Shown here: positions 11,781 to 48,909 of the stretch, piece after piece
How positions within the stretch are numbered: the first letter of the stretch is position 1
How the letters are laid out: each line of letters begins with the position of its first letter
Virus record (IMG/VR): IMGVR_UViG_3300023083_000001
Location: 124,001 to 188,000 of that record
Reading direction: 5' to 3' (one strand)
DNA length: 64,000 bases
The notes under the pieces: generated by a model
The model's database searches: none
The model's input: only the letters and a program-made list of their open reading frames with translations
What the model was told of the DNA's origin: nothing
Program-made: the position numbers and the translations under genes

Positions 11781-11830
11781 CGGCATACAGGGAGAGGCTC
11801 ACGCCTCTCCCTGTACACTTCTTTTTTTGT
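11781..11830. terminator. Asymmetric bidirectional terminator
   Basis: TACAGGGAGAGGC-TCAC-GCCTCTCCCTGTA; + side ends TACACTTCTTTTTTTG, - side ends TGTATGCCG. Confidence 0.75.
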
Positions 11831-11834
11831 GCTG

Positions 11835-12479
11835 TTACGTCCCAGGTGCACTGCCTTCAAGTTCAGCGATGCGCGCTTGCAGTTGTTGAACCAGATCCAC
11901 CAACGCCTGGTTGGATTGGGTCAGGTTAGCAATGTCTGAGCGAGCCGTCTGTAAAAGCACGAAGTCGGTCGTACGGTTCTTGATCGCTGCGTTACGAGCA
12001 GCCAGGTTCTGTACGTACTGATCTTGAGTGATAGCATCGGTCGTAGGAGCGCGAGCGATGAACACTGTTGACCCAACGCCGATGTCTTCAGACACTGCAC
12101 GCTGAATCGCCTGAGTCAGGCGAGTCGTATCGTAAGTATCCGGTAAGATCCCACAATCCACTGTAGCCACCAACCAACTGTGCGGCACCACACCCATGTT
12201 AGGATAGGAGTCTACGTAGGTAGTTGGGACGTACAGAGGTTTGAGGGTATCGGACAGCAGCGTGAGGATCAACGCACCCGCAGCAGCGTCTTCAGCGTAA
12301 GACGCATCAGTCAGACCAGCGGGTGTATAAACAAGCTTGACCGGATCAATGCCACGAGAGATCAACTCTTCAAAAGAACGAATCGCTCCCACGTGGTAGA
12401 TGATGCTCGGATTGGCAACGAAAGGAATCCTTAATAGGAACAGACCCTTCGAGCCAATTGGAGGCACGATGTTAGCCAT
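11835..12479 (-). CDS. Conserved phiKZ-like hypothetical/virion protein with C-terminal coiled coil
   Basis: 214 aa ORF, co-oriented and 3 nt from the upstream gene. Confidence 0.6.
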   Translation of the reverse strand: MANIVPPIGSKGLFLLRIPFVANPSIIYHVGAIRSFEELISRGIDPVKLVYTPAGLTDASYAEDAAAGALILTLLSDTLKPLYVPTTYVDSYPNMGVVPHSWLVATVDCGILPDTYDTTRLTQAIQRAVSEDIGVGSTVFIARAPTTDAITQDQYVQNLAARNAAIKNRTTDFVLLQTARSDIANLTQSNQALVDLVQQLQARIAELEGSAPGT

Positions 12480-12482
12480 GGA

Positions 12483-13811
12483 TTACGCCCCTTGCGTAAG
12501 TGCATCAACGCTGTACTTGGTAGCGACCAAGTAGAGGAACTTGTTAAAGCTCCGGGCTACGTAGACAACACCGTCCCGCGTCAAGCGGTTGTAGTTCTTC
12601 GGCACGCCGGTGTTAGGCGTCATCTCTTCAGCAATCATCAGCATCTCAGCCAACATCATGATGAACTCACGCGTGTCATCGCTCATGCGCCAGAAGTCGA
12701 CCGAGGTGGTCGGCACGTTGAGGTAGTCCGGGAACTCCTCGTTAAACATGTCGATGCCGTCACGGTTTTCAGGACCACCCACAATCCCTAACATCAGGGA
12801 GCGGAACTGTGAAGGTACGATGCACAGCTTTGCGTTGACATGCGCTTGAGTGTACTTGACACCCTTTGCCGTCTTACCGCACAGATCCATTGCCTTCACA
12901 GTGGAGGTGATGCCAGAGAAGTAACCGGTGTCACGGATCTCGTTAGGAATGCCGAAGTCATCCCACATCGGTGTGATGATGTACTCCGTTGACGTAAAAA
13001 GGTCAGGGAAGATCTCCGCCCATTCATCACGGGTGTGTGTGGAGTTCTTCAGGATCTCGTTACGGATCGCTTCTTTGACCGAGTCGAGGTTATCGCCGGC
13101 AGCGCCGTAGATGATCGTGATCCAGTTGGTGTCAATGGTCAACGTCTTGTCGTTACGGTCCTGCCAGGTGAAAACGTCGTTACGCATGACGGTTTCTGGG
13201 AACACACCACGGGCACCGTTGATGCGTGAGAACACTTCAGTCTGGTCAACCGCTTTGATCAATGCATCGACATCATTGTAATCATCAACGAACTTGTCTA
13301 CCGGCAATACCGGGGACACCACCAGAATGGCAAACTCATCAAACTGGTTAGCGAACGAGTCATCGGCAAACCAGATCTTCCAGGTATCGGTACCCGACTT
13401 CTGATACGGGGAGATCTCGATGTACTCCGGCGCAAAGAACGCACCGAACTGAATCTGACGACCCGAATCAATGAAATCGTAACTGGTACCCCAGGCTGCA
13501 ATGAACGCTTGCTGCAAGGAATCTTTCTGATCGGTGAACTTACCAGCCTTGGCCTGAGTGTAAACCCAGTTGACGGCTTTGAGCACTTGATAGGCGGTTG
13601 CATCATCAAGCTGTGTCGCCACTTCATTCTTACGGTAAGAGAAGCTGATCAGCGTCTCACCTGGGAATTCGGAGTGTACGTGCTGGGTCTTTTCACGCGC
13701 AAACGACTTGGACCAATCAGACAATTCGCCGATCGGTGCAATGACGCCAAGGGTGTTGTCAACCAGCGGCCCGATCTGAGCAAACGCTTTTAAAATATTC
13801 ACTATGTACAC
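12483..13811 (-). CDS. Conserved phiKZ-like virion structural protein
   Basis: 442 aa, GAGG SD with GTG start, typical codon usage. Confidence 0.6.
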   Translation of the reverse strand: MYIVNILKAFAQIGPLVDNTLGVIAPIGELSDWSKSFAREKTQHVHSEFPGETLISFSYRKNEVATQLDDATAYQVLKAVNWVYTQAKAGKFTDQKDSLQQAFIAAWGTSYDFIDSGRQIQFGAFFAPEYIEISPYQKSGTDTWKIWFADDSFANQFDEFAILVVSPVLPVDKFVDDYNDVDALIKAVDQTEVFSRINGARGVFPETVMRNDVFTWQDRNDKTLTIDTNWITIIYGAAGDNLDSVKEAIRNEILKNSTHTRDEWAEIFPDLFTSTEYIITPMWDDFGIPNEIRDTGYFSGITSTVKAMDLCGKTAKGVKYTQAHVNAKLCIVPSQFRSLMLGIVGGPENRDGIDMFNEEFPDYLNVPTTSVDFWRMSDDTREFIMMLAEMLMIAEEMTPNTGVPKNYNRLTRDGVVYVARSFNKFLYLVATKYSVDALTQGA

Positions 13812-13896
13812 CTCAACGAACGAGCGGCAAAAGGTATGATGTTAACCAGAGTATAAATATACACCGGACAGTCCTAAACTATATTATTTTTCGAGA

Positions 13897-14418
13897 ATGA
13901 TCGAGGGATTCAAAGTGTCTTCTACCTTGATGCTCATAGTGAAATCTCTTTGGCCGTTCTTAAAAGAGATCTTGCTAAAGGACAAGGGGTTCCGGGATCT
14001 TATTGCTGAGAACGTAGTGGCCACGTTCCTCAGTGGCTGTCTGCTCGCTCTTTTTGCCTTGTTTGTGTACACGGCTAATCTGGCCGATAAGAACTTTGAT
14101 GAAGTTAACCGACTGACCCAGGATGCTGGACACACGGCTAAAATCGTCGAGGATCAAAAGCACACGATAGAGGTGCAAGCTGAAGAGTTAAAGAAGTTTC
14201 GTGAAAGGTACCCAACGCCATTGGCGGTGGAACCTCAGCCTGTGGTTAAGCCAACTGCACCTGAGCCTACCTCTCACACTCCCGAACCTATTCCTGTAAA
14301 ACCAGACAGACCACCCACCAGACCGACTAGGCCTAGTATCAAGCCTAAGGATCCGCAAGGGTCTTTAAAGTCCTACGTCGAACAGCGTTTAAATAAGCTT
14401 GAACAGGACGGTAAGTAA
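13897..14418 (+). CDS. Putative i-spanin (Rz-like inner-membrane protein)
   Basis: One transmembrane segment (VVATFLSGCLLALFALFVY), coiled coil, long Pro-rich linker, C-terminal helix. Confidence 0.55.
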   Translation: MIEGFKVSSTLMLIVKSLWPFLKEILLKDKGFRDLIAENVVATFLSGCLLALFALFVYTANLADKNFDEVNRLTQDAGHTAKIVEDQKHTIEVQAEELKKFRERYPTPLAVEPQPVVKPTAPEPTSHTPEPIPVKPDRPPTRPTRPSIKPKDPQGSLKSYVEQRLNKLEQDGK

Positions 14419-14421
14419 GTC

Positions 14422-14784
14422 ATGATCAATCCGCGCTTTTTAATTCAACTACCACTGATGCTCCTCGGGTCATGCCAACCACTCACTCCGAATACGACGA
14501 TCTTCGTCTATACGGGCAGTACGCGTGCACCCGAGGTCAGGACGAGCGACAACCCACCTAACATACCCACTCTTGCGCAGAAGCCTAAACAGACGACTGC
14601 TAAAGAGTGCAAGAAGTTGGAGGTAGCCGCGATGCGTGCATATCAGCAACCCGCTGGGCCTGATTTATCCAAGGTCAACCCAACAGATGACCATGCGGTA
14701 GTGGACGCAGTGTTGGACAATAACGCGTTACTTCGCGCTGAGCTAACACGATTGCAGGAACAGTTTCTGTGTACCCTTGAGTGA
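14422..14784 (+). CDS. Putative o-spanin (outer-membrane lipoprotein)
   Basis: Signal peptide with lipobox LLGS-C, Gln at +2, Pro-rich linker, two further Cys residues. Confidence 0.55.
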   Translation: MINPRFLIQLPLMLLGSCQPLTPNTTIFVYTGSTRAPEVRTSDNPPNIPTLAQKPKQTTAKECKKLEVAAMRAYQQPAGPDLSKVNPTDDHAVVDAVLDNNALLRAELTRLQEQFLCTLE

Positions 14785-14844
14785 CGTGTGTCAAAAAACA
14801 CCAGATCCACCAATGCTCTAAGCGCCATTATCAAGGGAATCGAG

Positions 14845-16323
14845 ATGTCTTCTGAAGTCGTAACCGCAACCAGCGCTATCCTCTATTGCGATGGAGGTTT
14901 TCAGCCGGACAGCAAGATCAGTGGATGGGGAGTCCACGGCTACACGTATCTGGACGATGAACCCAAAAAAGGTACCGGTAACCCTAAAGCCATTCCCACC
15001 GACAAAGGTTACATGTTCGGTGAACGGATTGGTAACAAGGTCACCGTGGTTGAATACGTCGACATTGTCGCCGGTAAGAAAGACGCTCGCAGCAGCAATG
15101 AAGTAGAGCTACATGCTTTGCTCGACGCTGTGACGTGGCTCAAGGACAATCCGCACATCAAGAAAGTCCTGATCCTCACGGATTCACGTTTTGTTGTACA
15201 AGGTACCAACGATCACTTACCCAAGTGGCCTGGGAACAACTGGCTCAACAAGAAAGGTGAGCCAGTCAAGTACCGTCCAACCTGGGAGAAGGTTGGTGAA
15301 GTAGTAGCTCATCTGAAGACATCGGTTGACTTCACTCTGGACTGGGTGAAGAGTCATGAAGGCGAGCCGGGCAACACCGCAGCTGATGCGCTGGCCTGGA
15401 AAGGTAAGGTGTTGGCACGCAACGACGATCCAACGGTTGTGACCAAAGTGAATGCGGCACAAGGCTACTGGGGTATCAAGAACACAGCGCCCCGCATTCT
15501 GCAATCACCGCGTTGGTATTTCTCGACAGTGGATGACCAGTTCCGTAGCGATACAGGTGCTCACATCTACTACGTCGGTGCTCACGGTACCAAAGACAAG
15601 GAAGACGATCTGTACGGCAAGCGCTATGCAGATAACTTCCTGGGTGTGGTCATGGTTAACGATCCAGATCCTGTCATGGAATGCCTGCGTTTGAATGCGA
15701 TGAGTAAAGATCCTCGCAAACGCGGCGCGATCGTGATTGCTCACTTGGACATGATCTTCTCCCCGAAGGTCTACAAGGAGTTGTCTGACTACAACACCAC
15801 CTTCATGTATTCGCAACACAAACAGATTGACCTGCTTGATGCTCGCGACAACGAGATCATGGTGGAGCTTCGACCTACAGGTCTTGGTTTCCGTGGGGTC
15901 GGTCAGTGGAAGAGTTTAACCCGCGTACTGACCGAAGTGCAGAAGGGTGATCCGTACTACAGTGTGACTGATATCACGGACTTACTGTATGAGGAGCAAG
16001 GGGGTAAGAAGCCCGTTCGCAAACTCAAAGCAACGATAAACCAGATTGTCAAGTACATGGATTTCGATGTGACATTCAATCTGGAAAAAGAAAGCGGTGA
16101 GCCTAAACCGTTCATCGACAAGGTCCGTTTGATCCTGGGTGGCGATATACTCTCACGCAATCAGTTGGCCGCGCTTTCCGAAGATATCAAATCGGTAAAG
16201 GTTGTTACGTGGCGTGAATCTGATAACGTGGGTCGTTACGCGACTTTGATAGAACTGACGTCGGGAGACGTGGGTCTGTGGGCTAGAACAGAAGCCAACA
16301 TCTTTTTCAGGACCAAGCAATAA
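14845..16323 (+). CDS. Ribonuclease HI with large C-terminal extension (phiKZ gp155-like)
   Basis: YCDGG...SSNEVELHA...TDSRFV...WVKSHEGEPGNTAADALA catalytic motifs; start probably 14845 (track gives 14788). Confidence 0.9.
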   Translation: MSSEVVTATSAILYCDGGFQPDSKISGWGVHGYTYLDDEPKKGTGNPKAIPTDKGYMFGERIGNKVTVVEYVDIVAGKKDARSSNEVELHALLDAVTWLKDNPHIKKVLILTDSRFVVQGTNDHLPKWPGNNWLNKKGEPVKYRPTWEKVGEVVAHLKTSVDFTLDWVKSHEGEPGNTAADALAWKGKVLARNDDPTVVTKVNAAQGYWGIKNTAPRILQSPRWYFSTVDDQFRSDTGAHIYYVGAHGTKDKEDDLYGKRYADNFLGVVMVNDPDPVMECLRLNAMSKDPRKRGAIVIAHLDMIFSPKVYKELSDYNTTFMYSQHKQIDLLDARDNEIMVELRPTGLGFRGVGQWKSLTRVLTEVQKGDPYYSVTDITDLLYEEQGGKKPVRKLKATINQIVKYMDFDVTFNLEKESGEPKPFIDKVRLILGGDILSRNQLAALSEDIKSVKVVTWRESDNVGRYATLIELTSGDVGLWARTEANIFFRTKQ

Positions 16324-16349
16324 CTTAAACCGATCGTAGAGGGTTCTCT

Positions 16350-16769
16350 ATGAGCGCCATCAAGATACAGACTGCCACTCAGATGTCCGGCAGTCAGAAC
16401 CAAGAAGCGCCCGTAAAGGTATTGCCCAGCAAGAGGTTAAGTATTAAACGAATGATCTTCGTTGCGTCTTTATACTTCAAGATGGTCGATATAAAAAATC
16501 CAACCCGAGACCACCTCACCGTGGTCAATCAAAAGTTCGGTCTCGCTTACGGTGGGAATGCGCTTCTTTTCCCAGCAGCCATCTCAGGAATGATTTGGGA
16601 TCATGTCACTCTGGCGGATATCTTTAAAAAGTATGCGTCGGGGCAGCAGTCGGCTGAAGCGTGCATTAACGAAGTGATCGAACAGGCACCAAGCTGGGTT
16701 AAATACGATGCAGGAGATGCAATTCGACAGGATGTGAAAGCAGTCTTCGATTGCGTGCTTGCAGGATAA
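16350..16769 (+). CDS. Hypothetical protein
   Basis: GAGG SD; followed by a terminator hairpin. Confidence 0.65.
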   Translation: MSAIKIQTATQMSGSQNQEAPVKVLPSKRLSIKRMIFVASLYFKMVDIKNPTRDHLTVVNQKFGLAYGGNALLFPAAISGMIWDHVTLADIFKKYASGQQSAEACINEVIEQAPSWVKYDAGDAIRQDVKAVFDCVLAG

Positions 16770-16774
16770 AACAA

Positions 16775-16812
16775 CATACATGGGAGGTGGACAAAGCCAC
16801 CTCCCATGTATG
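16775..16812. terminator. Bidirectional 16-bp hairpin (CATA..TATG type)
   Basis: CATACATGGGAGGTGG-ACAAAG-CCACCTCCCATGTATG between convergent genes, with no U-tract. Confidence 0.7.
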
Positions 16813-16820
16813 CCCTGTCG

Positions 16821-17678: not shown

Positions 17679-17783
17679 ACTTAAGACTCCAACGATGTTA
17701 AGAATAGATAAACCCATAGCAGATGCTATTTAATTACCAGGTAGCTATATCCTGTGTAAACAATTTTCCCGGAGTACCGCCCA

Positions 17784-19259: not shown

Positions 19260-19270
19260 GGAAACTGTTC

Positions 19271-19558
19271 ATGTCTACCACCTCCCTGACCGGTAAGGTC
19301 TACAACCTGCTTGAAGAGCGAAAGCCTGAGTTGGCCGAGAACTTCAAGCATGGCTTCAATGGCACTTCCTCGACTGACGAAGAAGAAGTCAAACTCCTCA
19401 ACCGTTATTTTCGTGCAGTCCTCGCTACAGCGCCAGTTTCGACTGTCGATGAGCGTGGCTGCCTGATGGACAACTTGGCGCCTGATACTTGGCTCAAGTA
19501 TTTCAAGTCTCACGCCCTGCCGACCCTTCTGCGGTTCGATCTGCCTGCTCAGGAGTAA
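19271..19558 (+). CDS. Hypothetical protein
   Basis: AAGGA SD; in operon. Confidence 0.65.
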   Translation: MSTTSLTGKVYNLLEERKPELAENFKHGFNGTSSTDEEEVKLLNRYFRAVLATAPVSTVDERGCLMDNLAPDTWLKYFKSHALPTLLRFDLPAQE

Positions 19559-19564
19559 TCCAAG

Positions 19565-21951: not shown

Positions 21952-21974
21952 TGCTATTCTCCTAAGGAGTGGGT

Positions 21975-22487
21975 ATGTTTCTCAAACGATTGTTTCGGCG
22001 CTGGTTTCCAGAGGAAGTTACCGTCCCCTCTGAACCGGTCTGGCCGGAAGAAATCTGGGCACGAATGTACGCCATGGCAGACTATGCGCGCGGTTTACAA
22101 ATAGGTGAGTTGGGCATTCGTTACATGGACGTTGAAGTGGAAGTCACAACGTCAAGTATGCATCAGTTATTCAGACGCATTGAAACCATGCTCAGTTGCA
22201 TAGATATTCAGGGCGATCCTCCCGAATGGTGGGGTGCGCGTAATCGTGACAAGAAGTTACTAAGTCTGGCTGAGTTCTACTTCGACAGGCGTAATGGCTA
22301 TCGCTCGCCACAACAGGTGCACGATAAGTTAGTCGAAAAGGTCTCAGTCATACATCACCTAATTGAGTCTCAGGATATCAATGACCGTCACCTCTACTAT
22401 CACTACATGAAGCGTGAATTCTTTCAGGTGGTGAGTGATATTGTAGAAGTGTTAACGGCATCGATCGCTCTGAGTAAACCCGAGTAA
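21975..22487 (+). CDS. Hypothetical protein
   Basis: AAGGAG SD before ATG 21975. Confidence 0.65.
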   Translation: MFLKRLFRRWFPEEVTVPSEPVWPEEIWARMYAMADYARGLQIGELGIRYMDVEVEVTTSSMHQLFRRIETMLSCIDIQGDPPEWWGARNRDKKLLSLAEFYFDRRNGYRSPQQVHDKLVEKVSVIHHLIESQDINDRHLYYHYMKREFFQVVSDIVEVLTASIALSKPE

Positions 22488-22557: not shown

Positions 22558-23031
22558 ATGAACAACAAGTCGACCTTCCGAGAGTTATTGCTCGATCCTG
22601 AGAAGAAAAGGAGTGAAGCTGAAAATGAGTTAGCCTATCTGTTCCGAGATATCATGCTCGCCCATGGCGTGAATCCCAGTGAATGGGACCGTAGGCTCGA
22701 TATGTACTATCGAAGGCTATACACCAACTCCAGAGGTGAGGTTGATCTGATCAAGGTCAATCAGGAAAAGAGTAACTTGGTTCGAGCTTTGGCCAAGGAC
22801 ACGTTACCTTGGAAACGTTTCAACACATCCCTCCAGCTGATGGGTCCTGAGAGTTACACGATCATCATCGAGCTGACGTACAGGGATGGGCGAACACATA
22901 CGCACAAGGTTAAGATTCGTAATCGTCTCGCCGAGATGTTGGCTTTACAACAAGCTATCGAAGCGCACGATGAGGATGAAGAACTGGACCCAAATCAGCT
23001 GACATTGAACTTGGACGATGATGATGAGTGA
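22558..23031 (+). CDS. Conserved phiKZ-like hypothetical protein with acidic tail
   Basis: AAGGA SD before ATG 22558; D/E-rich C-terminus. Confidence 0.65.
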   Translation: MNNKSTFRELLLDPEKKRSEAENELAYLFRDIMLAHGVNPSEWDRRLDMYYRRLYTNSRGEVDLIKVNQEKSNLVRALAKDTLPWKRFNTSLQLMGPESYTIIIELTYRDGRTHTHKVKIRNRLAEMLALQQAIEAHDEDEELDPNQLTLNLDDDDE

Positions 23032-23506
23032 ACCTGTCAAAGTACTCAACCCGGAAGAAGATGGGATTACCCACATTAACACATACACCAAGGGTAAGAC
23101 TCGCCTAGGTCGCCTGCTGACTAACCTGGCAGATATCCCTGTAACGCATCCCAAGTACGGCATGTTCCGCTGCGCTGAAGGTTTGTGGTATTACATGCGA
23201 ACCGGTTGCAAGTATGAGAACCTGCGTGCGTTGACTGGCTTTGATGCGAAGAAGCTCGGTGTAACATTGGAAGTCGTTTGGATGGATGACTTCGAAGAGC
23301 AATTCAAGATCGCGCTGCGTAACAAGATCCAATCACATCCAGAGTTACATGAGTTGTTCATCAACTCGACTTTGCCGTTTGAACATTACTACTTCTACGG
23401 CAGTAACAAACCCGGTATTGCGCCCAAAGTGATTGAACCAAAGAACGTGAAATGGCTGACTGAGTTCTTCACAGAGTTGCGTGGAGAATGGCGGACTAAA
23501 GAGTAA
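23024..23506 (+). CDS. NADAR (YbiA)-like protein
   Basis: LTNL...P......F.CAEGLWY...AKKLG...W...FKIALRNKIQSHPEL..L..ST resembles the NADAR pattern. Confidence 0.55.
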   Translation: MSEPVKVLNPEEDGITHINTYTKGKTRLGRLLTNLADIPVTHPKYGMFRCAEGLWYYMRTGCKYENLRALTGFDAKKLGVTLEVVWMDDFEEQFKIALRNKIQSHPELHELFINSTLPFEHYYFYGSNKPGIAPKVIEPKNVKWLTEFFTELRGEWRTKE

Positions 23507-23513
23507 TGTTCAA

Positions 23514-23555
23514 TCCGACGGGGAAACCCGTCGGAGCTACACTTCTTTTTTTTGT
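23514..23555 (+). terminator. Terminator with TACACTTCTTTTTTTT tail
   Basis: TCCGACGGG-GAAA-CCCGTCGGA then GCTACACTTCTTTTTTTTG. Confidence 0.8.
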
Positions 23556-23592
23556 TTATGATGTGTCTTAACAATCGAATTCTGAGGTAATC

Positions 23593-24588
23593 ATGGCAAG
23601 TCGTCTGGCTTCTACAGTGTTTCAAGGCAGCGCGAAAGATGCCATGGTGGTGGAGGACGCCTACAAAGTCTCCACAGCCGAAACTCGCAACAGTTTGTTT
23701 GACAGTGCCAAAGGTATCTACGGTGATGCAGTCAGTGGGTTGTACGCTAACAAAGGTTCTATCCGTGAACTGGCCGCCGTAGTCTTAGCAGCCAAAGCCG
23801 GGACCATCAGTAAGGCAGACATGCTGGAACGCTCCCTGAGCGCGTTAGGTTCGTCCCTGCCTAGTCTCTTAGGTCAACTGGGCGGAACGCTTAAGAACAC
23901 CATTGCAGGCTTTCTGCCGGACGGTGTTGGCGACACGATGGGTGTCGTCTACAATAACGCTCAGCTGATCCTCAGCGTGGCTAACATTTCCAACGCTCAG
24001 GACTCTGCGGAGTTCTTGGCTGAGTTAACCGGTAACAGCGATCTACTGAAGGTCGTGAACATCGGTGCCGAGAGTGCGATCTTTGGGGGTATCCTTAAAG
24101 AGTTGATGTCGTTTGGTATTCCTGAACTGATGGATGATGTTATCGATCAGATCCAGAATGAGACGGTCAAGGCTAACGCACTCGCTTACTTGTCGACCTC
24201 AGCTGTCAATGGTTCTGACTTGGTCATGACCAACAAGATCATTGATGTGATTGGTCTGACCGCTTTCCTTGAACAGAACCCGGACGCAATCAACCGTACA
24301 CTGTCAAGCTTCTTCTTTGGTACGCTGGATACCGTTGATACCTATCCTGCCAAACGCATCGAACTGCTTGCGTTACTGACTCGCATTGATGCTCATTGGT
24401 CTGAGTCCTTGCGCAATGGTGCTTACATCAAGAACCTGGAACCGTTTACAGTCTGTAGTCCTGATGCAAAGACCTTGATGCTGATGGCAGCGCCTGAACG
24501 CACGTTAACGTTGGCCGCTGCAAAGTATCCACGTAACAACATCAATTCAATCATCAAAGGTTTGTACCCAGACGCTTACATTCCCTGA
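23593..24588 (+). CDS. Putative virion structural protein
   Basis: 331 aa, GAGG SD, TATG about 35 nt upstream. Confidence 0.55.
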   Translation: MASRLASTVFQGSAKDAMVVEDAYKVSTAETRNSLFDSAKGIYGDAVSGLYANKGSIRELAAVVLAAKAGTISKADMLERSLSALGSSLPSLLGQLGGTLKNTIAGFLPDGVGDTMGVVYNNAQLILSVANISNAQDSAEFLAELTGNSDLLKVVNIGAESAIFGGILKELMSFGIPELMDDVIDQIQNETVKANALAYLSTSAVNGSDLVMTNKIIDVIGLTAFLEQNPDAINRTLSSFFFGTLDTVDTYPAKRIELLALLTRIDAHWSESLRNGAYIKNLEPFTVCSPDAKTLMLMAAPERTLTLAAAKYPRNNINSIIKGLYPDAYIP

Positions 24589-39377: not shown

Positions 39378-39382
39378 TCGCA

Positions 39383-39417
39383 CCACTCCCGGCTCGAAAG
39401 CCGGGAGTGGCTGTATG
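39383..39417 (+). terminator. Hairpin followed by CTGTATG
   Basis: CCACTCCCGGCT-CGAA-AGCCGGGAGTGG, with no U-tract. Confidence 0.65.
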
Positions 39418-39438
39418 TACACACATGAGGTAACAGTA

Positions 39439-41017: not shown

Positions 41018-41027
41018 GGGCTGAGTC

Positions 41028-41750: not shown

Positions 41751-41761
41751 AGGAATTCATC

Positions 41762-42556: not shown

Positions 42557-42586
42557 GCTACTTTACCCACAACTGGAATTAAGTTA

Positions 42587-43996
42587 ATGGACCTGAGCCA
42601 ACTGATGCGAGACTACGCCGTTGAAAGCGGCGAGATGATCGTAGAACAAGTACCTGAGAATACTCAGGAGATGTTGAACGATCTGTTGATTCAAGAAACC
42701 ATCGCCGCTGGCGAGCCGACTGTTACTGCTCAGCTGGATCAGGCTGAAACCAGCGAAGACATCGCTGATCAGTTGGACGACCTGGCTGATCGCGCTGACG
42801 CAGTCATCGCTACCCAGGCTGATCCTGAAACCGCAGTATCCGCCGATGTGCTCAACGTCTCGATCGAATCGCTGCACCGCGAGTTCAACGTCGTCATGCG
42901 TGCTCACAAACTGCAAGAGGTCTTCAAGGCTTCCAGCTTTGAATCCGCTGGCAGCGACAGTGATCGCCTGACCGGTTTGGCAGCTGATGCTCGCCGCACC
43001 GCTGTGGTTACCCGCGGTCACGCTAAAGCACTGAAGGATCTCAGTGCTGAAGCAGGCGACATCCTGCGCTTCCTGCGTCAGGACAAAGCACGTTTGCAGA
43101 AAGCCAACGCGACTTTGGGCGCAGCCGTGGGTAAGTTGAACGGTCAATTGGCTGATCTGAAAGATGATCCGAAGATCATCAACCACGAAGGCATTGGTCG
43201 TTGGTTGACCGTGGAAGGCAAGCCGATCAAGAGCTTGAAAGACGCGGTTGAAGACGAAGCCAAATGGCTGGGTAAAGCGCACGACGCGGTTGATAAACTG
43301 GTGACCGAGTTGAAAGTCGCCGCGACCAAGCTCAAGGGCGACCCAACCCTCAGCGTCGATACGTTGCTGCCTGCCTCGATGTTCACGGCTGTCAACGGCC
43401 TGAGCACTGGTACCGGTGCGCTGATGGGTAACATCACCATCACGGGCGTAAGCACTGGCGAGAAAGTTTTCAAATACAAACGCGAGAACGAGTTCGTCGT
43501 CAGCAAAGGTAAAATTGCCAAAGCTGTCGGCTGGGGCATATTGGCAACTATCGGTTGGGGATTGGTCGGTGGTCTCGGCATCGCTATCGGTGGCGTCTTG
43601 ACTGGCGGTCTTATTTCAGGATTGGCTGGGACCTCGGTTGGGGTGGCGGCCACTAACCTGGCTGTTCGGACGGCTGGTGCGGTTTCTGCCGCCAAGTCTT
43701 ACGATGAAGATGTCAATAAATCTGAAGCTCAATCGGTGGCTAACCCTTCCGATCTGAAATCGGCATTGACCACGATCTTGGGTTACACCAAGTTCACCAA
43801 CTTCCACATGGATGTGGATGGTACTGGCGAACTTGTACAGATGTTGGATGCTATTGACGAGTTCAAAGGGGCTCGCGTCGCCTCTGGCGCCATCTTCGAT
43901 GCACTGAGTCGCTGCATGGAGATCTCTGAGATCATCTACGATCAAGCTATCTACACTACCACCAGCGCCGCTACACTGGCTTCTAAAGCAGTCTAA
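42587..43996 (+). CDS. Internal head (ejection) protein with acidic propeptide and Gly-rich hydrophobic segment
   Basis: Acidic N-terminus with AVE/SIE/SFE/SAE sites; GWGILATIGWGLVGGLGIAIGGVLTGGLISGLAG segment. Confidence 0.7.
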   Translation: MDLSQLMRDYAVESGEMIVEQVPENTQEMLNDLLIQETIAAGEPTVTAQLDQAETSEDIADQLDDLADRADAVIATQADPETAVSADVLNVSIESLHREFNVVMRAHKLQEVFKASSFESAGSDSDRLTGLAADARRTAVVTRGHAKALKDLSAEAGDILRFLRQDKARLQKANATLGAAVGKLNGQLADLKDDPKIINHEGIGRWLTVEGKPIKSLKDAVEDEAKWLGKAHDAVDKLVTELKVAATKLKGDPTLSVDTLLPASMFTAVNGLSTGTGALMGNITITGVSTGEKVFKYKRENEFVVSKGKIAKAVGWGILATIGWGLVGGLGIAIGGVLTGGLISGLAGTSVGVAATNLAVRTAGAVSAAKSYDEDVNKSEAQSVANPSDLKSALTTILGYTKFTNFHMDVDGTGELVQMLDAIDEFKGARVASGAIFDALSRCMEISEIIYDQAIYTTTSAATLASKAV

Positions 43997-43997
43997 G

Positions 43998-44048
43998 CGA
44001 CATAGTCCCCTCCTACTGGCGTGAACCAGTAGGAGGGGCTTTATGCTG
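43998..44048. terminator. CATA..TATG-type hairpin
   Basis: CCCCTCCTACTGG-CGTGAA-CCAGTAGGAGGGG then CTTTATGCTG. Confidence 0.7.
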
Positions 44049-44072
44049 CATTATAATCGTAGTTAAAAAATC

Positions 44073-44098
44073 TATGGTCACACATTGTAGTATTAGAC
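44073..44098 (+). promoter_or_regulatory. Putative early promoter
   Basis: TATGGTCACACATTG-TAGTAT-TAGA. Confidence 0.5.
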
Positions 44099-44124
44099 AC
44101 AGGCAACAATCAGAGGAAATTGGC

Positions 44125-44661
44125 ATGTTCCCCAGAGAGCCAGCAACTTACATCATGACACATCGCCCATCTGGCGTGTATTACATTGGTTCTACAGGTA
44201 ATCTTAATTTAAGAGTAGCTCAACACAAATACAAAATCATTAACGGGGAACATAACTCAACGCAGTTCAAAGCACTCTCATCGCGTTGGGAAGATATTTC
44301 TATCGAGTATGAACTTGCGGTTGATTACCACAACGCTGAGAGTCTAGAAATAGCTCTACTGAAAACAAACATCAAAGACCCATTGTGTTCTAACGCAATG
44401 ACCACTGTCCAAGAATGGGCTAAGGCTACCACGCACTTTGACGAAGCTCGTCGTAAATCAGCTGACACGCGGAGGGGTAAACCCAGAGATGAGTTGACTC
44501 GTTCTAAAATAAGCGCGGCTAAGAGTCGCCGTATAGTTGGCGACGGAGTCGAATACGCATCAGCGTTGGAAGCTTCTCAGAAATTAGGAATACCGTACAG
44601 AACTGTTCGATCTAGATTGGGCAGTAATAATGGCTTAGGTAAGCTCTGGTACTACTTGTAA
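44125..44661 (+). CDS. Free-standing GIY-YIG homing endonuclease with NUMOD3 and HTH tail
   Basis: ATYIMTHRPSGVYYIGSTGNL..R...H, conserved Glu, RSKISAAK, EYASALEASQKLGI; more AT-rich than flanking genes; GAGGA SD before ATG 44125. Confidence 0.88.
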   Translation: MFPREPATYIMTHRPSGVYYIGSTGNLNLRVAQHKYKIINGEHNSTQFKALSSRWEDISIEYELAVDYHNAESLEIALLKTNIKDPLCSNAMTTVQEWAKATTHFDEARRKSADTRRGKPRDELTRSKISAAKSRRIVGDGVEYASALEASQKLGIPYRTVRSRLGSNNGLGKLWYYL

Positions 44662-44724
44662 CCCAACCCCAAATAGAAACAATAATGTCTCTATCAACTC
44701 GAAATTCCCGTGGAGGGAACTATC

Positions 44725-45150
44725 ATGAAAACTACACACGAACTGTTCATCGAAACTTTCAACAACATCACCGTCAAAGTTCCATTCAATCCTGAGTGGA
44801 ACAATGGCACTGGTTACTTCAACGGTCTGGCAGAAGCGAACCTGGGTCTGCCCGTCGGTACTCGTTTCACCACCGTCACCGAAGGTGAGAACGATCGCAA
44901 GATCGTCGGCATCGTTACAGGTGCGGGTAACGTGGTCTTCTTCGAACGTTACACTGCTGGCAAGAACGGCGTTATCACGCTGAACCTGCCACGCGCATTG
45001 ACCGGTCTGTACGACACTGGCGTACAGTCTCCGATGATCTTCGAACTGGCTGTCGGTGGTACTGGCGGTTGGAACGCTAACATCGGTAAGGTGCTGGACC
45101 GCTACGTTGAGGCTGGTTTGAAAGAAGCCAAACTGGTTGAGGTTGAATAA
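44725..45150 (+). CDS. Early hypothetical protein (WNNGTGYFNG motif)
   Basis: GGAGGG SD before ATG 44725; strongly biased codons. Confidence 0.7.
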   Translation: MKTTHELFIETFNNITVKVPFNPEWNNGTGYFNGLAEANLGLPVGTRFTTVTEGENDRKIVGIVTGAGNVVFFERYTAGKNGVITLNLPRALTGLYDTGVQSPMIFELAVGGTGGWNANIGKVLDRYVEAGLKEAKLVEVE

Positions 45151-45166
45151 TCTCAATCTAAAGAAA

Positions 45167-45191
45167 TACAGTAACACATCACCACCTTGAA
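45167..45191 (+). promoter_or_regulatory. Putative early promoter
   Basis: TACAGTAACACATCA-CCACCT-TGAA. Confidence 0.55.
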
Positions 45192-45237
45192 TCAAATCCC
45201 TAATTGTTCGCAATACCACCATTTGGAGTAATACCGC

Positions 45238-45501
45238 ATGTCCACTGAAATCATGAACGTTACCGCTGAAGTTGTTCGCAATGCAAACTTCGTTACCAAG
45301 CTCAAAGGCCTGGCTACCGCTCACCCGATCGGCGCTCTGGTTGTTGGTACCGGCACCGTTGCTCTCGCCAGCTACGGCGCGTACAAGATCACCCGTTCCA
45401 TCTTCGGCCGTAAGTCTGCACCTGTGCAGATCAAAGCTCAAGTCGCACCAGCACCTGCCCCAGTCGTCACCCCAGCGCCGGCTGCAACTGAAGCTGCGTA
45501 A
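45238..45501 (+). CDS. Small early membrane protein with Pro/Ala tail
   Basis: GGAG SD; transmembrane segment IGALVVGTGTVALASYGAY. Confidence 0.7.
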   Translation: MSTEIMNVTAEVVRNANFVTKLKGLATAHPIGALVVGTGTVALASYGAYKITRSIFGRKSAPVQIKAQVAPAPAPVVTPAPAATEAA

Positions 45502-45508
45502 ACCAGAG

Positions 45509-45554
45509 ACACTCAGGAGCCGAAAGGTTCCTGAGTGTTCTTTCTTTTTTTTTG
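45509..45554 (+). terminator. Intrinsic terminator
   Basis: ACACTCAGGAGCC-GAAA-GGTTCCTGAGTGT then TCTTTCTTTTTTTTT. Confidence 0.85.
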
Positions 45555-45567
45555 TAAGTAAACCAAA

Positions 45568-45593
45568 CATAATCACACATTACCAGATTAGAC
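45568..45593 (+). promoter_or_regulatory. Putative early promoter
   Basis: CATAATCACACATTA-CCAGAT-TAGA. Confidence 0.6.
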
Positions 45594-45618
45594 AATACTC
45601 ATCGATGGAGCAGTACGC

Positions 45619-46068
45619 ATGACACAGCCTCGCCGTAGTACAATAAACAAGTCGATTGATCTTCAAGCTTCTCTGGCTATTGTCAGTCTGCTTGAGTTAC
45701 ATCTCGCCAAAGAAGAAAGCTACGGCTATCATATTGAAGTCGAGATCTACAACCACACAATCACGTTGGCTCAAGGAAACCCTGATAGTAAGGACTCACC
45801 AGGCACTGAACGTGTGGCTGCGATCACATTCCCTTACCGGGTGTCCAGTGAGATTATTATCGAGTTCGGTTTGGCTACCAGTTTCGAAACGATGGAAGAG
45901 CTGGACACCGATCCAAGACCTATGGCGTTGTATGACACCAAACGTCTTTGCGAATCATCCATCGATTCCATGGAAGTCAAGTCGGTGAGTTTCAATCACA
46001 ACGACTTCGACGGCGCTGTTAACTTTCTGTACAAATGGCTGTTCCCAGAAATCCCTGCATCTGCGTAA
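45619..46068 (+). CDS. Early hypothetical protein
   Basis: GGAG SD; follows the promoter motif. Confidence 0.65.
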   Translation: MTQPRRSTINKSIDLQASLAIVSLLELHLAKEESYGYHIEVEIYNHTITLAQGNPDSKDSPGTERVAAITFPYRVSSEIIIEFGLATSFETMEELDTDPRPMALYDTKRLCESSIDSMEVKSVSFNHNDFDGAVNFLYKWLFPEIPASA

Positions 46069-46163
46069 TAAGTTACAAACGTTGTAAGTCCTGTGTTCAG
46101 AGGTAACCCGCCTCGACACGAATACCTAACCCGTGTAAACCCGTAAAGTAAGGAAGTGTTCCA

Positions 46164-46625
46164 ATGACTGCTAAACTCCCAGCTGATAACATCCGCGCCA
46201 TTGCTGATGCCCTGAAGCCTGCAATCGAAATCGATCCAACCACCGGCGTCGCCAAAGCCGACACCGCTGAAGATATCTTTGCTCAGTTCCTGCCGGCCAC
46301 CATCACCCTCGACACCGTCAAAGACGTCCAGGGCGCGATGCTCGACTTCTCCGCTGCCCAGACCCTGGCGCACGGCGAGTTGCAGATCAACCACATGCAC
46401 AAACACCCTGAGCTGAAATCCGGTTCGCTGTCGACCAAGATCGGCTACAGCAGCTTCGAATCCAGCATCAAGCGCGAAACCTCCGGCGTCGCCATGGGCA
46501 AAGCCTGGAAGAAACAAGGCGTTGCTGTTACTGACGTCGTGCTCGGCACCGGCCGCAAGAAGTCTGACTACAACACCGCTGTCGCCTATCTGGGCGAGCA
46601 CGCAGAATCGGTCTTCGCTAACTAA
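46164..46625 (+). CDS. Hypothetical protein, predicted highly expressed
   Basis: AAGGA SD; strong C-ending codon bias like the sheath gene. Confidence 0.75.
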   Translation: MTAKLPADNIRAIADALKPAIEIDPTTGVAKADTAEDIFAQFLPATITLDTVKDVQGAMLDFSAAQTLAHGELQINHMHKHPELKSGSLSTKIGYSSFESSIKRETSGVAMGKAWKKQGVAVTDVVLGTGRKKSDYNTAVAYLGEHAESVFAN

Positions 46626-46682
46626 GCGAAACTGGTATGTTAGCAACCCTGGAAGGGCCAACCTCTGGGGAAGCTGACACGT

Positions 46683-46732
46683 CATACATCGGGGGAGCAA
46701 TCCCCCGATGTATGCTCCATCTTTATTTTTTG
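46683..46732 (+). terminator. 14-bp CATA..TATG hairpin plus delayed U-tract
   Basis: CATACATCGGGGGA-GCAA-TCCCCCGATGTATG...CTTTATTTTTT. Confidence 0.75.
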
Positions 46733-46760
46733 TTGATGATCGTTTATTTAGGAGAATGTC

Positions 46761-47033
46761 GTGAGTCGTAATATCGCCGCCGCCAAGAACTACTTCCAAT
46801 CCCCTGCGTTGTTCTACGTGTTCGTTCTGCAATACACGGACGGCACTGTAAGACAACGGCTGTTGGGGATTACTGAACGCCATTACCAATCCCTACAGCT
46901 CGCTCAGGTGTGGAACAATAACATCAGTCAAGAGCTTACCGCAGTGGAACGCATTGTCGGTACGGACTCAGCGACAGATGCACGTGAAGTGTTGTTGCGT
47001 CTATATGAAGGAATGACCAAAAACGGGAAGTGA
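46761..47033 (+). CDS. Hypothetical protein
   Basis: AGGAG SD, GTG start. Confidence 0.6.
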   Translation: MSRNIAAAKNYFQSPALFYVFVLQYTDGTVRQRLLGITERHYQSLQLAQVWNNNISQELTAVERIVGTDSATDAREVLLRLYEGMTKNGK

Positions 47034-47311
47034 TCATGTTCAAGTTTTCTCAATACAACTTTGGCTTGTCCCGCAATGACTTGATTGAGTTTGAGTTCAA
47101 GGACAAGGAAGAGTTATTTGCTCATTACCTGTTTGCCAATTACGCCAAGCGTACCATCTTCCACCGCTTCTCTCTTAAGGACACACCTAACTACGGTGTG
47201 GTTATCCTGGGGGAGTATTACGGTGGTACTGAGTGGCACAAGCTTGGCCGTATCGAAGGTGACGTGAGTCAGCTCGATATTCCTTTTAACGAAACCAGTT
47301 GGATGGTCTGA
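47030..47311 (+). CDS. Hypothetical protein
   Basis: GTGA overlap, tight operon. Confidence 0.6.
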   Translation: MIMFKFSQYNFGLSRNDLIEFEFKDKEELFAHYLFANYAKRTIFHRFSLKDTPNYGVVILGEYYGGTEWHKLGRIEGDVSQLDIPFNETSWMV

Positions 47312-47803
47312 ATGAAACCTCGTTACGTAGAACTCGCACAATTGCTCGAAGCGATATCCCAAGCTGAAGCAAAAGCCCAGGGTGCCTTTACTCCGGTGCA
47401 TGAAATTCAATACCTGCCCATGGGCGGCGAAGATCAGCGCACCACCAACAGCCACTGGGTTGGTTATCATTTCTTCAAAGAAATCCCTGAGGAGAAAGCT
47501 CGGGTTGTCACAGTTGGTTATGTCACTGGACCGAGGACCTGGGAAGTCTGTGTCGGTCGAGCAGGGGCGTTTAAGGCAGCAGATGGGAGAGCGTCATGGC
47601 CTCGCACCATCCGTAAGGATTCGGTAAGCGATCAGGAACAGATCAGTCAGCCAGACGGCGTTACTAAATCGCTCACCAACTCTGACGGCGAAGATACCAG
47701 CTTGCGGTTCATATTCAGCCTGAAGGAAACAGAGTCAGTTGCCAAACTGGTGACGGCCTTTCTGATCCACTTGGAAATCCCATCAACTCTAAACTACCTG
47801 TAA
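47312..47803 (+). CDS. Hypothetical protein
   Basis: Abuts the previous stop codon. Confidence 0.6.
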   Translation: MKPRYVELAQLLEAISQAEAKAQGAFTPVHEIQYLPMGGEDQRTTNSHWVGYHFFKEIPEEKARVVTVGYVTGPRTWEVCVGRAGAFKAADGRASWPRTIRKDSVSDQEQISQPDGVTKSLTNSDGEDTSLRFIFSLKETESVAKLVTAFLIHLEIPSTLNYL

Positions 47804-47813
47804 GGGTTAGCCA

Positions 47814-48137
47814 ATGAAATTGGTATTTGAAGATCTTCGTAGTTACAGTGAGATTGAAAAAGCAATCTTCCGTCAGGAGAAACTTCGTATTGTCTTTCGT
47901 ACAGATCAAAACGACAAACCTCGCATGGACGGTGTGACCGAACTCGATATTGAGATCACTGACACGATGACTGTGGCAGAAGCAATCTTCGCCATCCGAG
48001 GGGCATTTGTTCGCCGCCCGCCTTTCGCTACACTTATTGGACGTACCGGGATTGTTCCCCATGGGCAAGCGCTGATTAAAGATCTGCGTTTCCGTGAACC
48101 CTTAATGACCCGACTGAAGGAGCAAGGAGATGTTTGA
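47814..48137 (+). CDS. Hypothetical protein, possible beta-grasp fold; paralog of 48558..48863
   Basis: E.A..RQ...R..FR.D.N...TV...G..P.G..LIK shared with the paralog. Confidence 0.6.
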   Translation: MKLVFEDLRSYSEIEKAIFRQEKLRIVFRTDQNDKPRMDGVTELDIEITDTMTVAEAIFAIRGAFVRRPPFATLIGRTGIVPHGQALIKDLRFREPLMTRLKEQGDV

Positions 48138-48540
48138 GCTAAAACAACATTGCGCATTGATTCTTTCAGATAGTCCTGAGACGGATGAACTGATTATCAA
48201 GTCGTATGGGTTTACCGGTACGAAGCGGATCGAAGTTCCTGTGGGTTTTCAATGGCAGAAAGCTTTCCGTAATGAAGAAAGTCACGACATTTACATCGTC
48301 CGGCTTGATGAACAGGACCTGGATTGGCTGAGTCGTTTTGGCTTCTCTGGTACTAGAGAAGGTATCTGGACGGCCACCGGTGAAATCTACAAACGTTACT
48401 TCATTCCAGAGGATGGTAGACGACCTGAGACAATGGATGTCTGGTTCGACATCGTAGCCGTCGGCACTCCTAACGTACTGGTCCTCAAGAAGCGGCGTGG
48501 CACGGACGTTACTCCAGATTGGTTTATCACCCGTCCCTGA
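48130..48540 (+). CDS. Hypothetical protein
   Basis: Overlapping member of the operon. Confidence 0.6.
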   Translation: MFELKQHCALILSDSPETDELIIKSYGFTGTKRIEVPVGFQWQKAFRNEESHDIYIVRLDEQDLDWLSRFGFSGTREGIWTATGEIYKRYFIPEDGRRPETMDVWFDIVAVGTPNVLVLKKRRGTDVTPDWFITRP

Positions 48541-48557
48541 TTCAGAGGAGAATGAAA

Positions 48558-48863
48558 ATGTCTGACCTCAATCTCACCGTTGAGAACTGCATGACGCTGG
48601 ATGCACTTGAATCTGCCTTGATCCGTCAAGTAGGCATTCGTGTGATCTTCCGCTCTGATCGCAACACAATTATCCACGATCCTAAGTACGCTTCGGAATG
48701 TCTGAACTACGAGTTAGACCTTGAAGGGGCGACAGTAGGAAGCTGGCGTGAATGGATTACTCGAGCTACGGGTAGTACACCGGTGTTCGTTTCTCCACGG
48801 GGTGTGATTCCCGCTGGACACACTCTGATCAAGAGTATCCAGTTCCCACCGATCGGTGACTGA
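48558..48863 (+). CDS. Hypothetical protein, paralog of 47814..48137
   Basis: GAGGAG SD before ATG 48558; shared motifs. Confidence 0.6.
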   Translation: MSDLNLTVENCMTLDALESALIRQVGIRVIFRSDRNTIIHDPKYASECLNYELDLEGATVGSWREWITRATGSTPVFVSPRGVIPAGHTLIKSIQFPPIGD

Positions 48864-48869
48864 TGCAAA

Positions 48870-48909
48870 CACCAGGGCTTCGGCCCTGGTGATACACTTC
48901 TTTTTTTGT
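48870..48909 (+). terminator. Terminator with TACACTTCTTTTTTT tail
   Basis: CACCAGGGC-TTCG-GCCCTGGTG then ATACACTTCTTTTTTTG. Confidence 0.85.

What the first reader, a model, noticed from the sequence alone, without database searches (positions are those of the whole stretch)
11814..48909. Second terminator class: unrelated stems share the tail TACACTTCTTTTTTT
Seen: identical 15-nt tails at 11814, 23538 and 48893 follow hairpins of different sequence, with looser versions at 45539, 46719, 62209 and 62635. The U-run is displaced several nt from the stem, unlike canonical intrinsic terminators. The 11781 hairpin is asymmetric: this tail on the early-gene strand and TATGCCG on the late-gene strand. 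At 48.9-49.05 kb, convergent early and late units use two separate hairpins, one of each class. Inference: a polymerase-specific termination grammar.
Basis: partly seen in the sequence, partly recalled or inferred. Interest (0 to 1): 0.65.

Follow-up and report, generated by a model that had tools for sequence, protein, structure and literature searches.

The report
Early-gene terminator tails in jumbo phage
In this phiKZ-like giant phage, a hairpin followed a few bases later by TTC-T7-9-GT marks the ends of early gene units on one DNA strand only, which suggests, but does not prove, that the phage's two RNA polymerases stop at different signals.

Summary
TACACTTCTTTTTTT occurs 3 times in the window and 4 times in the 258-kb genome. 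All copies are on the + strand, each after a different strong hairpin, and shuffles give 0.

The 15-mer is not the functional unit. It is the best-matching subset of about 26 hairpin tails whose conserved core is TTC-T7-9-GT, starting a median 6 nt after the stem. T runs of 7 or more number 24 on the + strand and 0 on the - strand.

The same strand carries all 26 copies of a long promoter box, P1. P1 resembles the validated phiKZ early promoter and sits in front of the chimallin, PhuZ and non-virion RNA polymerase genes.

Every + strand gene block with a P1 has a T tail. Late units carry only hairpin+TATGC tails, which match the published phiKZ terminator motif. These late units are the virion genes on the - strand, and the virion polymerase, protease and terminase genes on the + strand.

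The pattern repeats in a 243-kb relative with about 45% protein identity and in phiKZ itself (pooled odds ratio 5, p=1.7e-5).

So the tails close early units. Polymerase specificity remains an inference: hybrid tails exist, TATGC hairpins lie inside early units, and no RNA data exist for this phage.

The parts
11786..11815 (.). Hairpin with a 13-bp stem and TCAC loop, between convergent early (+) and virion (-) genes
   Evidence: -28.5 kcal/mol, z -5.7 on +; z -8.1 on -
11816..11830 (+). T tail: CAC spacer, TTC, T7 (11822-11828), GT.
11780..11787 (-). TATGCCGC tail of the same hairpin read on the - strand (class 1, phiKZ-type)
   Evidence: motif in PMC10914365
11297..11332 (+). P1 early-type promoter box driving the 137-aa gene 11366-11779 that ends at the T tail
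   Evidence: the cassette is absent at the syntenic place of G001
22329..22364 (+). P1 box upstream of the two small genes 22558-23506
23514..23535 (+). Hairpin with a 9-bp stem and GAAA loop
   Evidence: z -4.3
23538..23555 (+). T tail TACACTTC-T8-GT, at the syntenic place of a T9 tail in G001 whose stem has a different sequence
44059..44094 (+). P1 box, directly after the class 1 hairpin 44007-44038 that ends the virion RNA polymerase / head protease block
45153..45188 (+). P1 box
45508..45555 (+). Hairpin plus tail CTTTC-T9-GT, followed at once by the P1 box 45554-45589
46683..46733 (+). Hybrid tail: CATA...TATG hairpin, then CTCCATCTTTA-T6-GT
   Evidence: syntenic T tail in G001
48870..48891 (+). 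Hairpin with a 9-bp stem and TTCG loop, ending the run of small + strand genes
   Evidence: z -4.5; not found by the canonical scan
48893..48909 (+). T tail TACACTTC-T7-GT
49017..49052 (.). Second hairpin (49026-49044) of the convergent junction. It reads TTTATGCCC on the - strand after the virion gene 49061-49927, and AGTATGTT on the + strand.
61021..61056 (+). P1 box
62186..62222 (+). Hairpin plus hybrid tail TTATGTTCC-T6; the P1 box 62221-62256 follows
62612..62650 (+). Weak hairpin plus loose pyrimidine tail TTGGGCTCTCTTTCTTTTTGTT
59721..59754 (.). Example of a purely class 1 two-way hairpin (CATA-stem-TATG) ending a late + strand block (virion proteins, terminase) and a - strand gene; no T run

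Best explanation
The tails are the U-tract part of hairpin terminators that close early transcription units of a phiKZ-like (Chimalliviridae) jumbo phage.

All early promoters (P1, consensus TAGTyAAAAnnnTTTACAGTCATACATTACC) point one way. By analogy with phiKZ they are read by the RNA polymerase carried in the virion. Their units contain small unknown genes, plus chimallin, PhuZ and the subunits of the second, non-virion polymerase. The units end at a GC-rich hairpin, a 4-10 nt pyrimidine-rich spacer, and then TTC-T7-9-GT.

TACACTTCTTTTTTT is one spelling of this tail. Its TA extends the stem, and CAC is a variable spacer that swaps with TATGC at orthologous sites.

Late and middle units, on either strand, end at hairpins followed by yTTATGCYG with no U-run. 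That is the known phiKZ terminator motif.

Inferred, not shown:
- The virion polymerase needs the weak rU:dA stretch to release.
- The non-virion polymerase stops at hairpin+TATG, perhaps by pausing when its beta-like subunit binds TATG in the non-template strand.
- The distal position of the U-run reflects the geometry of the virion polymerase.

The confidence given is for the tails being terminators of early units. For strict polymerase specificity I would give about 0.3.
For: Shown here:
1. T runs of 7 or more number 24 on the + strand and 0 on the - strand, and 21 of the 24 follow an intergenic hairpin. Intergenic hairpins read on the + strand have a T run in 26 cases; read on the - strand, in 0.
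2. All 26 P1 boxes are on the + strand. P1 shares its A-tract and ATTAC core with the phiKZ early box aaaaaaaTTTGAGATyTATATTAC, found upstream of gp54 and gp68.
3. Homologues of chimallin, PhuZ and all five non-virion polymerase subunits lie between a P1 and a T tail. Virion polymerase subunits and the major capsid protein do not.
4. Blocks with a P1 have a T tail in 14 of 14 cases, against 2 of 8 without (p=3.8e-4). In relative G001 the figures are 11 of 11 against 2 of 10 (p=2.2e-4).
5. The first terminator after a P1 is a T tail in 16 of 22 cases, against 10 of 32 elsewhere (p=0.005). G001 gives 11 of 16 against 11 of 27. phiKZ, using its own early box, gives 14 of 23 against 5 of 26 (p=0.004). 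The pooled odds ratio is 5.0, p=1.7e-5.
6. At least 13 T tails sit at syntenic places in G001, at about 45% protein identity, with different stems and the same TTC-Tn-G core.
7. In phiKZ, T-rich tails follow gp54, gp39, gp71-75 and gp123-125.
8. In the window, units ending in a T tail encode small unknown proteins. Units ending in TATGC encode virion proteins, virion polymerase subunits, the head protease and terminase.

From the literature:
- Early genes of phiKZ are unidirectional (PMC8244752).
- A conserved motif that can be found bioinformatically marks early promoters (PMC7598289).
- The non-virion polymerase subunits are early genes (PMC4666361).
Against: - No transcript 3' ends are available for this phage, which comes from a leaf-litter metagenome with no RNA runs.
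- The classes overlap. TATG and a T run occur in one tail at five or more sites.
- 6 of 22 P1 units meet a TATGC hairpin first, and 10 T tails have no P1 directly upstream.
- Block size confounds the block test.
- Gene calls, thresholds and the P1 matrix are my own and were chosen after seeing the data.
- In vivo, 201phi2-1 terminators of several motif types stopped the host polymerase (PMC11512511), so such hairpins need not be polymerase-specific.
- The exact T7GT string is weak or absent in other Chimalliviridae lineages: RSL2 1:2, Eowyn 2:2.
Confidence: 0.7

Rival explanations
1. These are ordinary intrinsic terminators that would stop any multisubunit polymerase. They go with early genes only because early genes travel as promoter-gene-terminator cassettes that carry their own terminator type (moron-like, or like the T4 PeSL cassettes). 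No difference between the polymerases is involved.
For: - With a liberal stem extension, 20 of 23 tails pass a lax canonical rule.
- The cassette P1 + 137-aa gene + T tail at 11297-11830 is absent at the syntenic place of G001.
- Hairpins often abut a P1 box.
- 201phi2-1 terminators work with the host polymerase (PMC11512511).
Against: - This does not explain why none of about 20 - strand units has a U-run, although all need terminators.
- It does not explain why + strand late blocks lack U-runs.
- It does not explain why core early genes that are not mobile (chimallin, the non-virion polymerase operons) have T tails in this phage, G001 and phiKZ.
Confidence: 0.25
2. The U-rich 3' tail serves the RNA rather than termination. 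It would be a stability, chaperone-binding or export mark for early messages made before, or outside, the phage nucleus.
For: - The tail is restricted to early units.
- The sequence is conserved beyond a plain U-run, with C before and GT after it.
Against: - There is no evidence for such a factor.
- The position right after a strong hairpin, about 40 nt past stop codons and at convergent junctions, is what a terminator needs.
- The tail would be in the RNA only if termination happens beyond it.
Confidence: 0.08
3. The T run is an upstream T-rich element of the early promoter that follows it, not part of a terminator.
For: - phiKZ early promoters have a T-rich part upstream of -19 (PMC8244752).
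- Four T tails lie 14-19 nt before a P1 core, at genome positions 17947, 54627, 169545 and 186217.
Against: - Only 4 of 26 T tails are followed by a P1.
- 9 lie at convergent junctions with no + strand gene downstream.
- 22 of 26 P1 boxes have no T run.
Confidence: 0.03
4. The T run is a strand-specific DNA signal for replication, nicking or packaging, or a compositional accident.
For: Strict restriction to one strand.
Against: - AT skew is small, and T5 runs are 78 against 60.
- The runs are tied to hairpins at gene ends and to promoter-defined units.
- The 15-mer is never seen in shuffles.
Confidence: 0.03

Closest known systems
Conserved phiKZ / 201phi2-1 terminator motif: stem-loop + yTTATKyyGT (PMC10914365, PMC11512511)
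   Same: Same virus family. Both have GC-rich hairpins with 4-nt loops and a sequence-specific tail ending in GT. The window's other class (hairpin + yTTATGCYG) matches the motif letter for letter. T7GT tails also occur in phiKZ, 10 forward against 2 reverse.
   Different: The published motif pools G and T at position K. As far as the held text shows, it is not split by strand, promoter class or polymerase. The tails studied here lack TTAT and carry a longer, more distal U-run.
Canonical bacterial intrinsic (Rho-independent) terminator
   Same: A GC-rich hairpin followed by a U-rich stretch, just past the stop codon.
   Different: U content peaks at positions 8-13 after the stem instead of 1-8. 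There are conserved non-U letters (C before the run, G after it). The tails occur on one strand only. The polymerases are phage-encoded and sigma-less.
Vaccinia virus early termination signal T5NT (own knowledge, not tested here)
   Same: A U-run signal (TTTTTGT fits T5NT) is used only for early genes, which are transcribed by a multisubunit polymerase packaged in the virion. Later classes ignore it.
   Different: The poxvirus signal needs no hairpin. It acts through the capping enzyme and NPH-I, and termination occurs 20-50 nt downstream. There is no homology; this is an analogy only.
T4-type PeSL cassettes (promoter-early stem-loop; own knowledge)
   Same: Repeated intergenic modules of a terminator hairpin next to an early promoter flank small, variable early genes. 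One such cassette here is present or absent between relatives.
   Different: PeSLs use host sigma-70 promoters. A role in recombination was not tested here.

Membership tests
Canonical intrinsic terminator | GC-rich stem-loop directly downstream of a gene | tested here: met
   Stems of 9-13 bp, -19 to -28 kcal/mol, z -4.3 to -5.7, lying 35-45 nt past the stop codon
Canonical intrinsic terminator | U-tract of 7-9 nt starting 0-2 nt after the stem | tested here: inconclusive
   The T run starts a median 6 nt after the stem. The hairpins at 48870 and 46683 fail the standard scan. With a liberal stem extension, 20 of 23 pass a lax rule of 5 T in 8 nt.
Canonical intrinsic terminator | Transcripts end there | not testable with these tools
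   No RNA runs hold this phage
phiKZ-type terminator motif (hairpin + yTTATKyyGT) | TTAT(G/T)YYGT directly after the stem | tested here: not met
   The three exact-tail sites read TACACTTCT7GT, and only the final GT is shared. The window's class 1 hairpins do meet it, for example 44007-44038 with CTTTATGCTG.
phiKZ-type terminator motif (hairpin + yTTATKyyGT) | Occurs in a phiKZ-like phage with two phage-encoded polymerases | tested here: met
   phiKZ_gp29PR and DUF7193 domains, virion polymerase subunits in the window, and non-virion polymerase and chimallin homologues in the genome
Early (virion polymerase) regulon of Chimalliviridae | Same orientation as, and downstream of, the conserved early promoter box | tested here: met
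   All 26 P1 boxes and all 26 T tails are on the + strand. Every block with a P1 has a T tail.
Early (virion polymerase) regulon of Chimalliviridae | Units contain genes that must be early (non-virion polymerase subunits, chimallin) | tested here: met
   the same arrangement in phiKZ
Early (virion polymerase) regulon of Chimalliviridae | Transcribed in the first minutes without protein synthesis | not testable with these tools
   Needs an infection time course; the host is unknown
Poxvirus-type T5NT early terminator | Acts without a hairpin through a protein that reads U5NU in the RNA | not tested
   Only the string match was seen: TTTTTGT lies within the tail

The most novel reading that the evidence does not exclude
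Chimalliviridae would carry two orthogonal stop codes. Hairpin + distal TTC-U7-9-GU would be required by the virion polymerase. Hairpin + TTATGCYG would be read only by the non-virion polymerase, through the same non-template TATG pocket it uses at promoters. Early transcription would then run through late-type terminators and vice versa, so read-through would be programmed by time.
Probability: 0.3. Interest if true: 0.8.

Novelty: new variant of a known kind. Interest (0 to 1): 0.6.

Why it matters
The termination behaviour of the two sigma-less multisubunit polymerases of jumbo phages is essentially unstudied. The reviews and transcriptome papers I could read treat the terminators as one pool.

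A tail type confined to the early strand and tied to early promoters, seen in three genomes including the model phage phiKZ, gives a concrete, cheap test. It needs only a re-sort of published 3'-end tables by tail and promoter class, and in vitro tail swaps.

If the signals turn out to be polymerase-specific, the work would yield orthogonal terminator parts. It would also improve operon and temporal-class prediction for uncultured jumbo phages from sequence alone.

Tried and rejected
- A near-identity search of the phage collection found nothing. The closest named phages share only about 39% identity in a conserved virion protein.
- No RNA runs hold the phage. The three DNA runs that hold it are leaf-litter metagenomes.
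- Rfam gave no family in the window.
- The supplementary terminator tables of the phiKZ and 201phi2-1 papers are not held. Ceyssens 2014 is not held either. The published 3' ends could therefore not be sorted by tail class.
- The string T7GT is not a family-wide marker. The counts are Xoo-sp14 6:0, LucasX 3:0, pPa_SNUABM_DT01 1:0, RSL2 1:2 and Eowyn 2:2, close to the control in the last two.
- I rejected the T run as a promoter element, as a DNA-level strand signal and as a compositional accident (see the rival explanations).
- I rejected the 15-mer as the unit of function, because positions -8 to -4 before the run carry almost no information.
- An apparent exception is explained. The T tail at genome position 255700 ends a block of head genes with no P1. 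However, its last two small genes follow a weak P1-like box (GCTACATTAC at about 254205), and the orthologous unit in G001 has a full P1.
Full report
**What the window is.** The window is bases 124001-188000 of a 258,357-bp virus record with direct terminal repeats. It encodes a phiKZ sheath-type domain, DUF7193, virion structural proteins, a head protease, terminase and large RNA polymerase beta-like subunits. The genome also encodes homologues of phiKZ chimallin, PhuZ, all five non-virion polymerase subunits and the virion polymerase subunits. It is therefore a phiKZ-like (Chimalliviridae) jumbo phage. It has no close named relative; the best match shares about 39% identity in a conserved virion protein. 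It comes from leaf-litter metagenomes.

**The observation.** TACACTTCTTTTTTT lies at 11814, 23538 and 48893, always on the + strand, and never appears in shuffles. A fourth copy lies just upstream of the window, and the - strand has none. Each copy follows a different strong hairpin.

**The family behind the 15-mer.**
- Genome-wide, T runs of 7 or more number 24 on the + strand and 0 on the - strand. A first-order Markov chain predicts about 9 and 15.
- 21 of the 24 runs follow an intergenic hairpin.
- Among intergenic hairpins of -9 kcal/mol or better, 26 have a T run when read on the + strand and none when read on the - strand.
- Aligned on the run, the informative positions are TT and C just before it (24, 24 and 22 of 26) and G and T just after it (20 and 25 of 26). 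The five positions that spell TACAC carry almost no information.
- The signal is therefore TTC-T7-9-GT, starting a median 6 nt after the stem.
- The first TA of the 15-mer pairs in the stem at two of the three window sites.
- At orthologous sites TACAC swaps with TATGC.

**How unusual the spacing is.** U content after the stem rises from 0.3 at position 1 to at least 0.87 at positions 8-13. The standard scan, which wants 5 T in 8 nt starting 0-2 nt after the stem, misses the hairpins at 48870 and 46683. It finds no more sites than in shuffles. The spacer is about half U, however. With a liberal stem extension, 20 of 23 tails pass that rule. The U-run is shifted and lengthened rather than absent from the usual place.

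**The other class.** Many hairpins are followed by yTTATGCYG on one or both strands, and often CATA...TATG forms the base of the stem. This matches the conserved phiKZ terminator motif BCCYCCCCHWWDGGGRRGGBYTTATKYYGT (PMC10914365), which also resembles motif A of 201phi2-1 (PMC11512511). TATG is in addition the phiKZ late promoter, with G as the start (PMC4666361). [quoted passage not shown] Hairpin-free A-rich...TATG boxes sit in divergent regions upstream of - strand virion operons here.

**The early promoter.** A 30-nt box, TAGTyAAAAnnnTTTACAGTCATACATTACC (P1), occurs 26 times, all intergenic and all on the + strand. It shares an A-tract and the ATTAC core with the phiKZ early box, which I recovered upstream of gp54 and gp68. 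The review literature says that the one motif findable by sequence in these phages is the early promoter (PMC7598289). It also says that phiKZ early genes are unidirectional (PMC8244752).

In this genome the following early genes lie in P1-headed units:
- Chimallin has a P1 222 nt upstream and a T tail 59 nt downstream.
- The gp68-70 homologues lie in a P1-to-T-tail unit.
- The gp71/73-74 homologues lie in a P1-to-T-tail unit.
- The gp123 homologue lies in a P1-to-T-tail unit.
- PhuZ has a P1 959 nt upstream, beyond a 277-aa gene on the - strand, and its T tail lies 4.8 kb downstream.
- The gp55 homologue follows the chimallin T tail, as in phiKZ.
- The virion polymerase subunits and the major capsid gene do not lie in such units.

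**Link between P1 and T tails.**
- Every + strand block with a P1 has a T tail (14 of 14). Blocks without a P1 mostly lack one (6 of 8 lack it; p=3.8e-4). Block size is a confounder.
- Unit by unit, the first terminator after a P1 is a T tail in 16 of 22 cases, against 10 of 32 for other + strand units (p=0.005).
- In the window, units ending in a T tail encode small proteins of unknown function, one of them homing-endonuclease-like.
- The - strand units encode baseplate, tail and head proteins.
- The + strand blocks without a P1 encode the virion polymerase subunits, protease, virion proteins and terminase. They end in TATGC hairpins with no T run.

**Replication in other genomes.**
- A complete 243-kb IMG/VR relative, G001, shares about 45% median protein identity over 172 shared genes. 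It has 19 T runs of 7 or more on one strand and none on the other. It also has 23-24 P1-like boxes on that same strand, the same TTC-T8-10-G core and a median 6-nt spacer.
- At least 13 of its T tails sit at places syntenic with those here, with different stems.
- Where G001 lacks the 137-aa gene and its P1, the junction carries a plain CATA...TATG hairpin without a T run.
- Two partial relatives show T7GT at 8:0 and 0:2.
- In phiKZ, intergenic hairpins with T-rich tails number 19 on the + strand and 2 on the - strand. They follow gp54, gp39, gp71-75 and gp123-125.
- With the phiKZ early box as marker, the first terminator is T-type in 14 of 23 cases, against 5 of 26 elsewhere (p=0.004).
- Pooled over the three genomes, the Mantel-Haenszel odds ratio is 5.0, p=1.7e-5.
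- Other lineages show the exact string weakly or not at all.

**Interpretation.**
- Shown: the tails are conserved, strand-restricted elements adjacent to hairpins, and they preferentially close units headed by the early-type promoter.
- Inferred from phiKZ: those units are read by the virion polymerase.
- Inferred from the distribution only: the virion polymerase needs the U-run, while the non-virion polymerase is served by hairpin+TATG. The argument is that no - strand or late + strand unit has acquired a U-run, although long U-runs are otherwise avoided.
- Against strict specificity: hybrid tails exist, TATGC hairpins lie inside early units, and phage terminators of several motif types are reported to stop a host polymerase (PMC11512511).

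**Limits.** Gene calls, hairpin thresholds and motif matrices are my own and were set after looking at the data. No transcript ends exist for this phage, and the published 3'-end tables were not available to me.

**Verdict.** The polymerase-specific reading is plausible but untested. The kind of element is known: intrinsic-type terminators of phiKZ-like phages. The split into an early, one-strand U-run variant appears not to have been described in the literature I could search.

Noticed in passing
window 48941-49052 (+): A degenerate P1-like box (TTACATTACAGCCATACTG) lies between the two convergent hairpins. It is followed about 60 nt later by the hairpin 49026-49044 with the + strand tail AGTATGTT. 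This could bound a small RNA of about 70 nt.
   Followed up: no
whole genome (G000); window has 4 T runs of 7 or more and 0 A runs of 7 or more: Long T runs look counter-selected outside terminators. No A run of 7 or more occurs in 258 kb, against about 15 expected. Only 3 T runs of 7 or more that do not follow an intergenic hairpin occur, against about 9 expected for all such runs.
   Followed up: partly
window 52100-52125 (-) and other divergent regions: A-rich stretches ending in TATG(C/T), without a hairpin, lie upstream of - strand virion operons, for example AAACAAAAAATACTATGCTGAC before the sheath operon. They look like phiKZ-type late promoters.
   Followed up: partly
leaders after P1 boxes, e.g. 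window 11333-11365 and 61057-61088: A conserved 5' leader follows many P1 boxes...CTTGAA... and then CCGTGGAGG or GACCGAGGAGGTC just before the start codon. The k-mer CCGTGGAG is intergenic in 10 of its 12 copies.
   Followed up: no
window 11297-11830 against G001rc 233760-234240: The early cassette (P1, 137-aa gene of phrog_12854, T tail) is present here and absent at the syntenic junction of the relative. The relative has two small ORFs and a plain two-way TATG hairpin there.
   Followed up: yes
window 44001-64000: Sigma-70-like promoter matches are about half the shuffle expectation (8 against 15.9), which fits independence from the host polymerase.
   Followed up: no
window 23554-23566 and G001rc about 2661-2675: Directly after the T tail at 23546, the string GTyTATGrTGTG is conserved between the two phages. 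It may be a TATG promoter for the next gene, 23593-24588.
   Followed up: no
genome 191009-191968 (window 67009-67968, outside the window): The P1 nearest to PhuZ points into a real 277-aa gene on the - strand (phrog_3179). An early transcript to PhuZ would therefore be antisense to that gene.
   Followed up: partly
window 44125-44661 (+): The first gene of a P1 unit has a weak homing-endonuclease match (phrog_314, E 3.9e-9).
   Followed up: no
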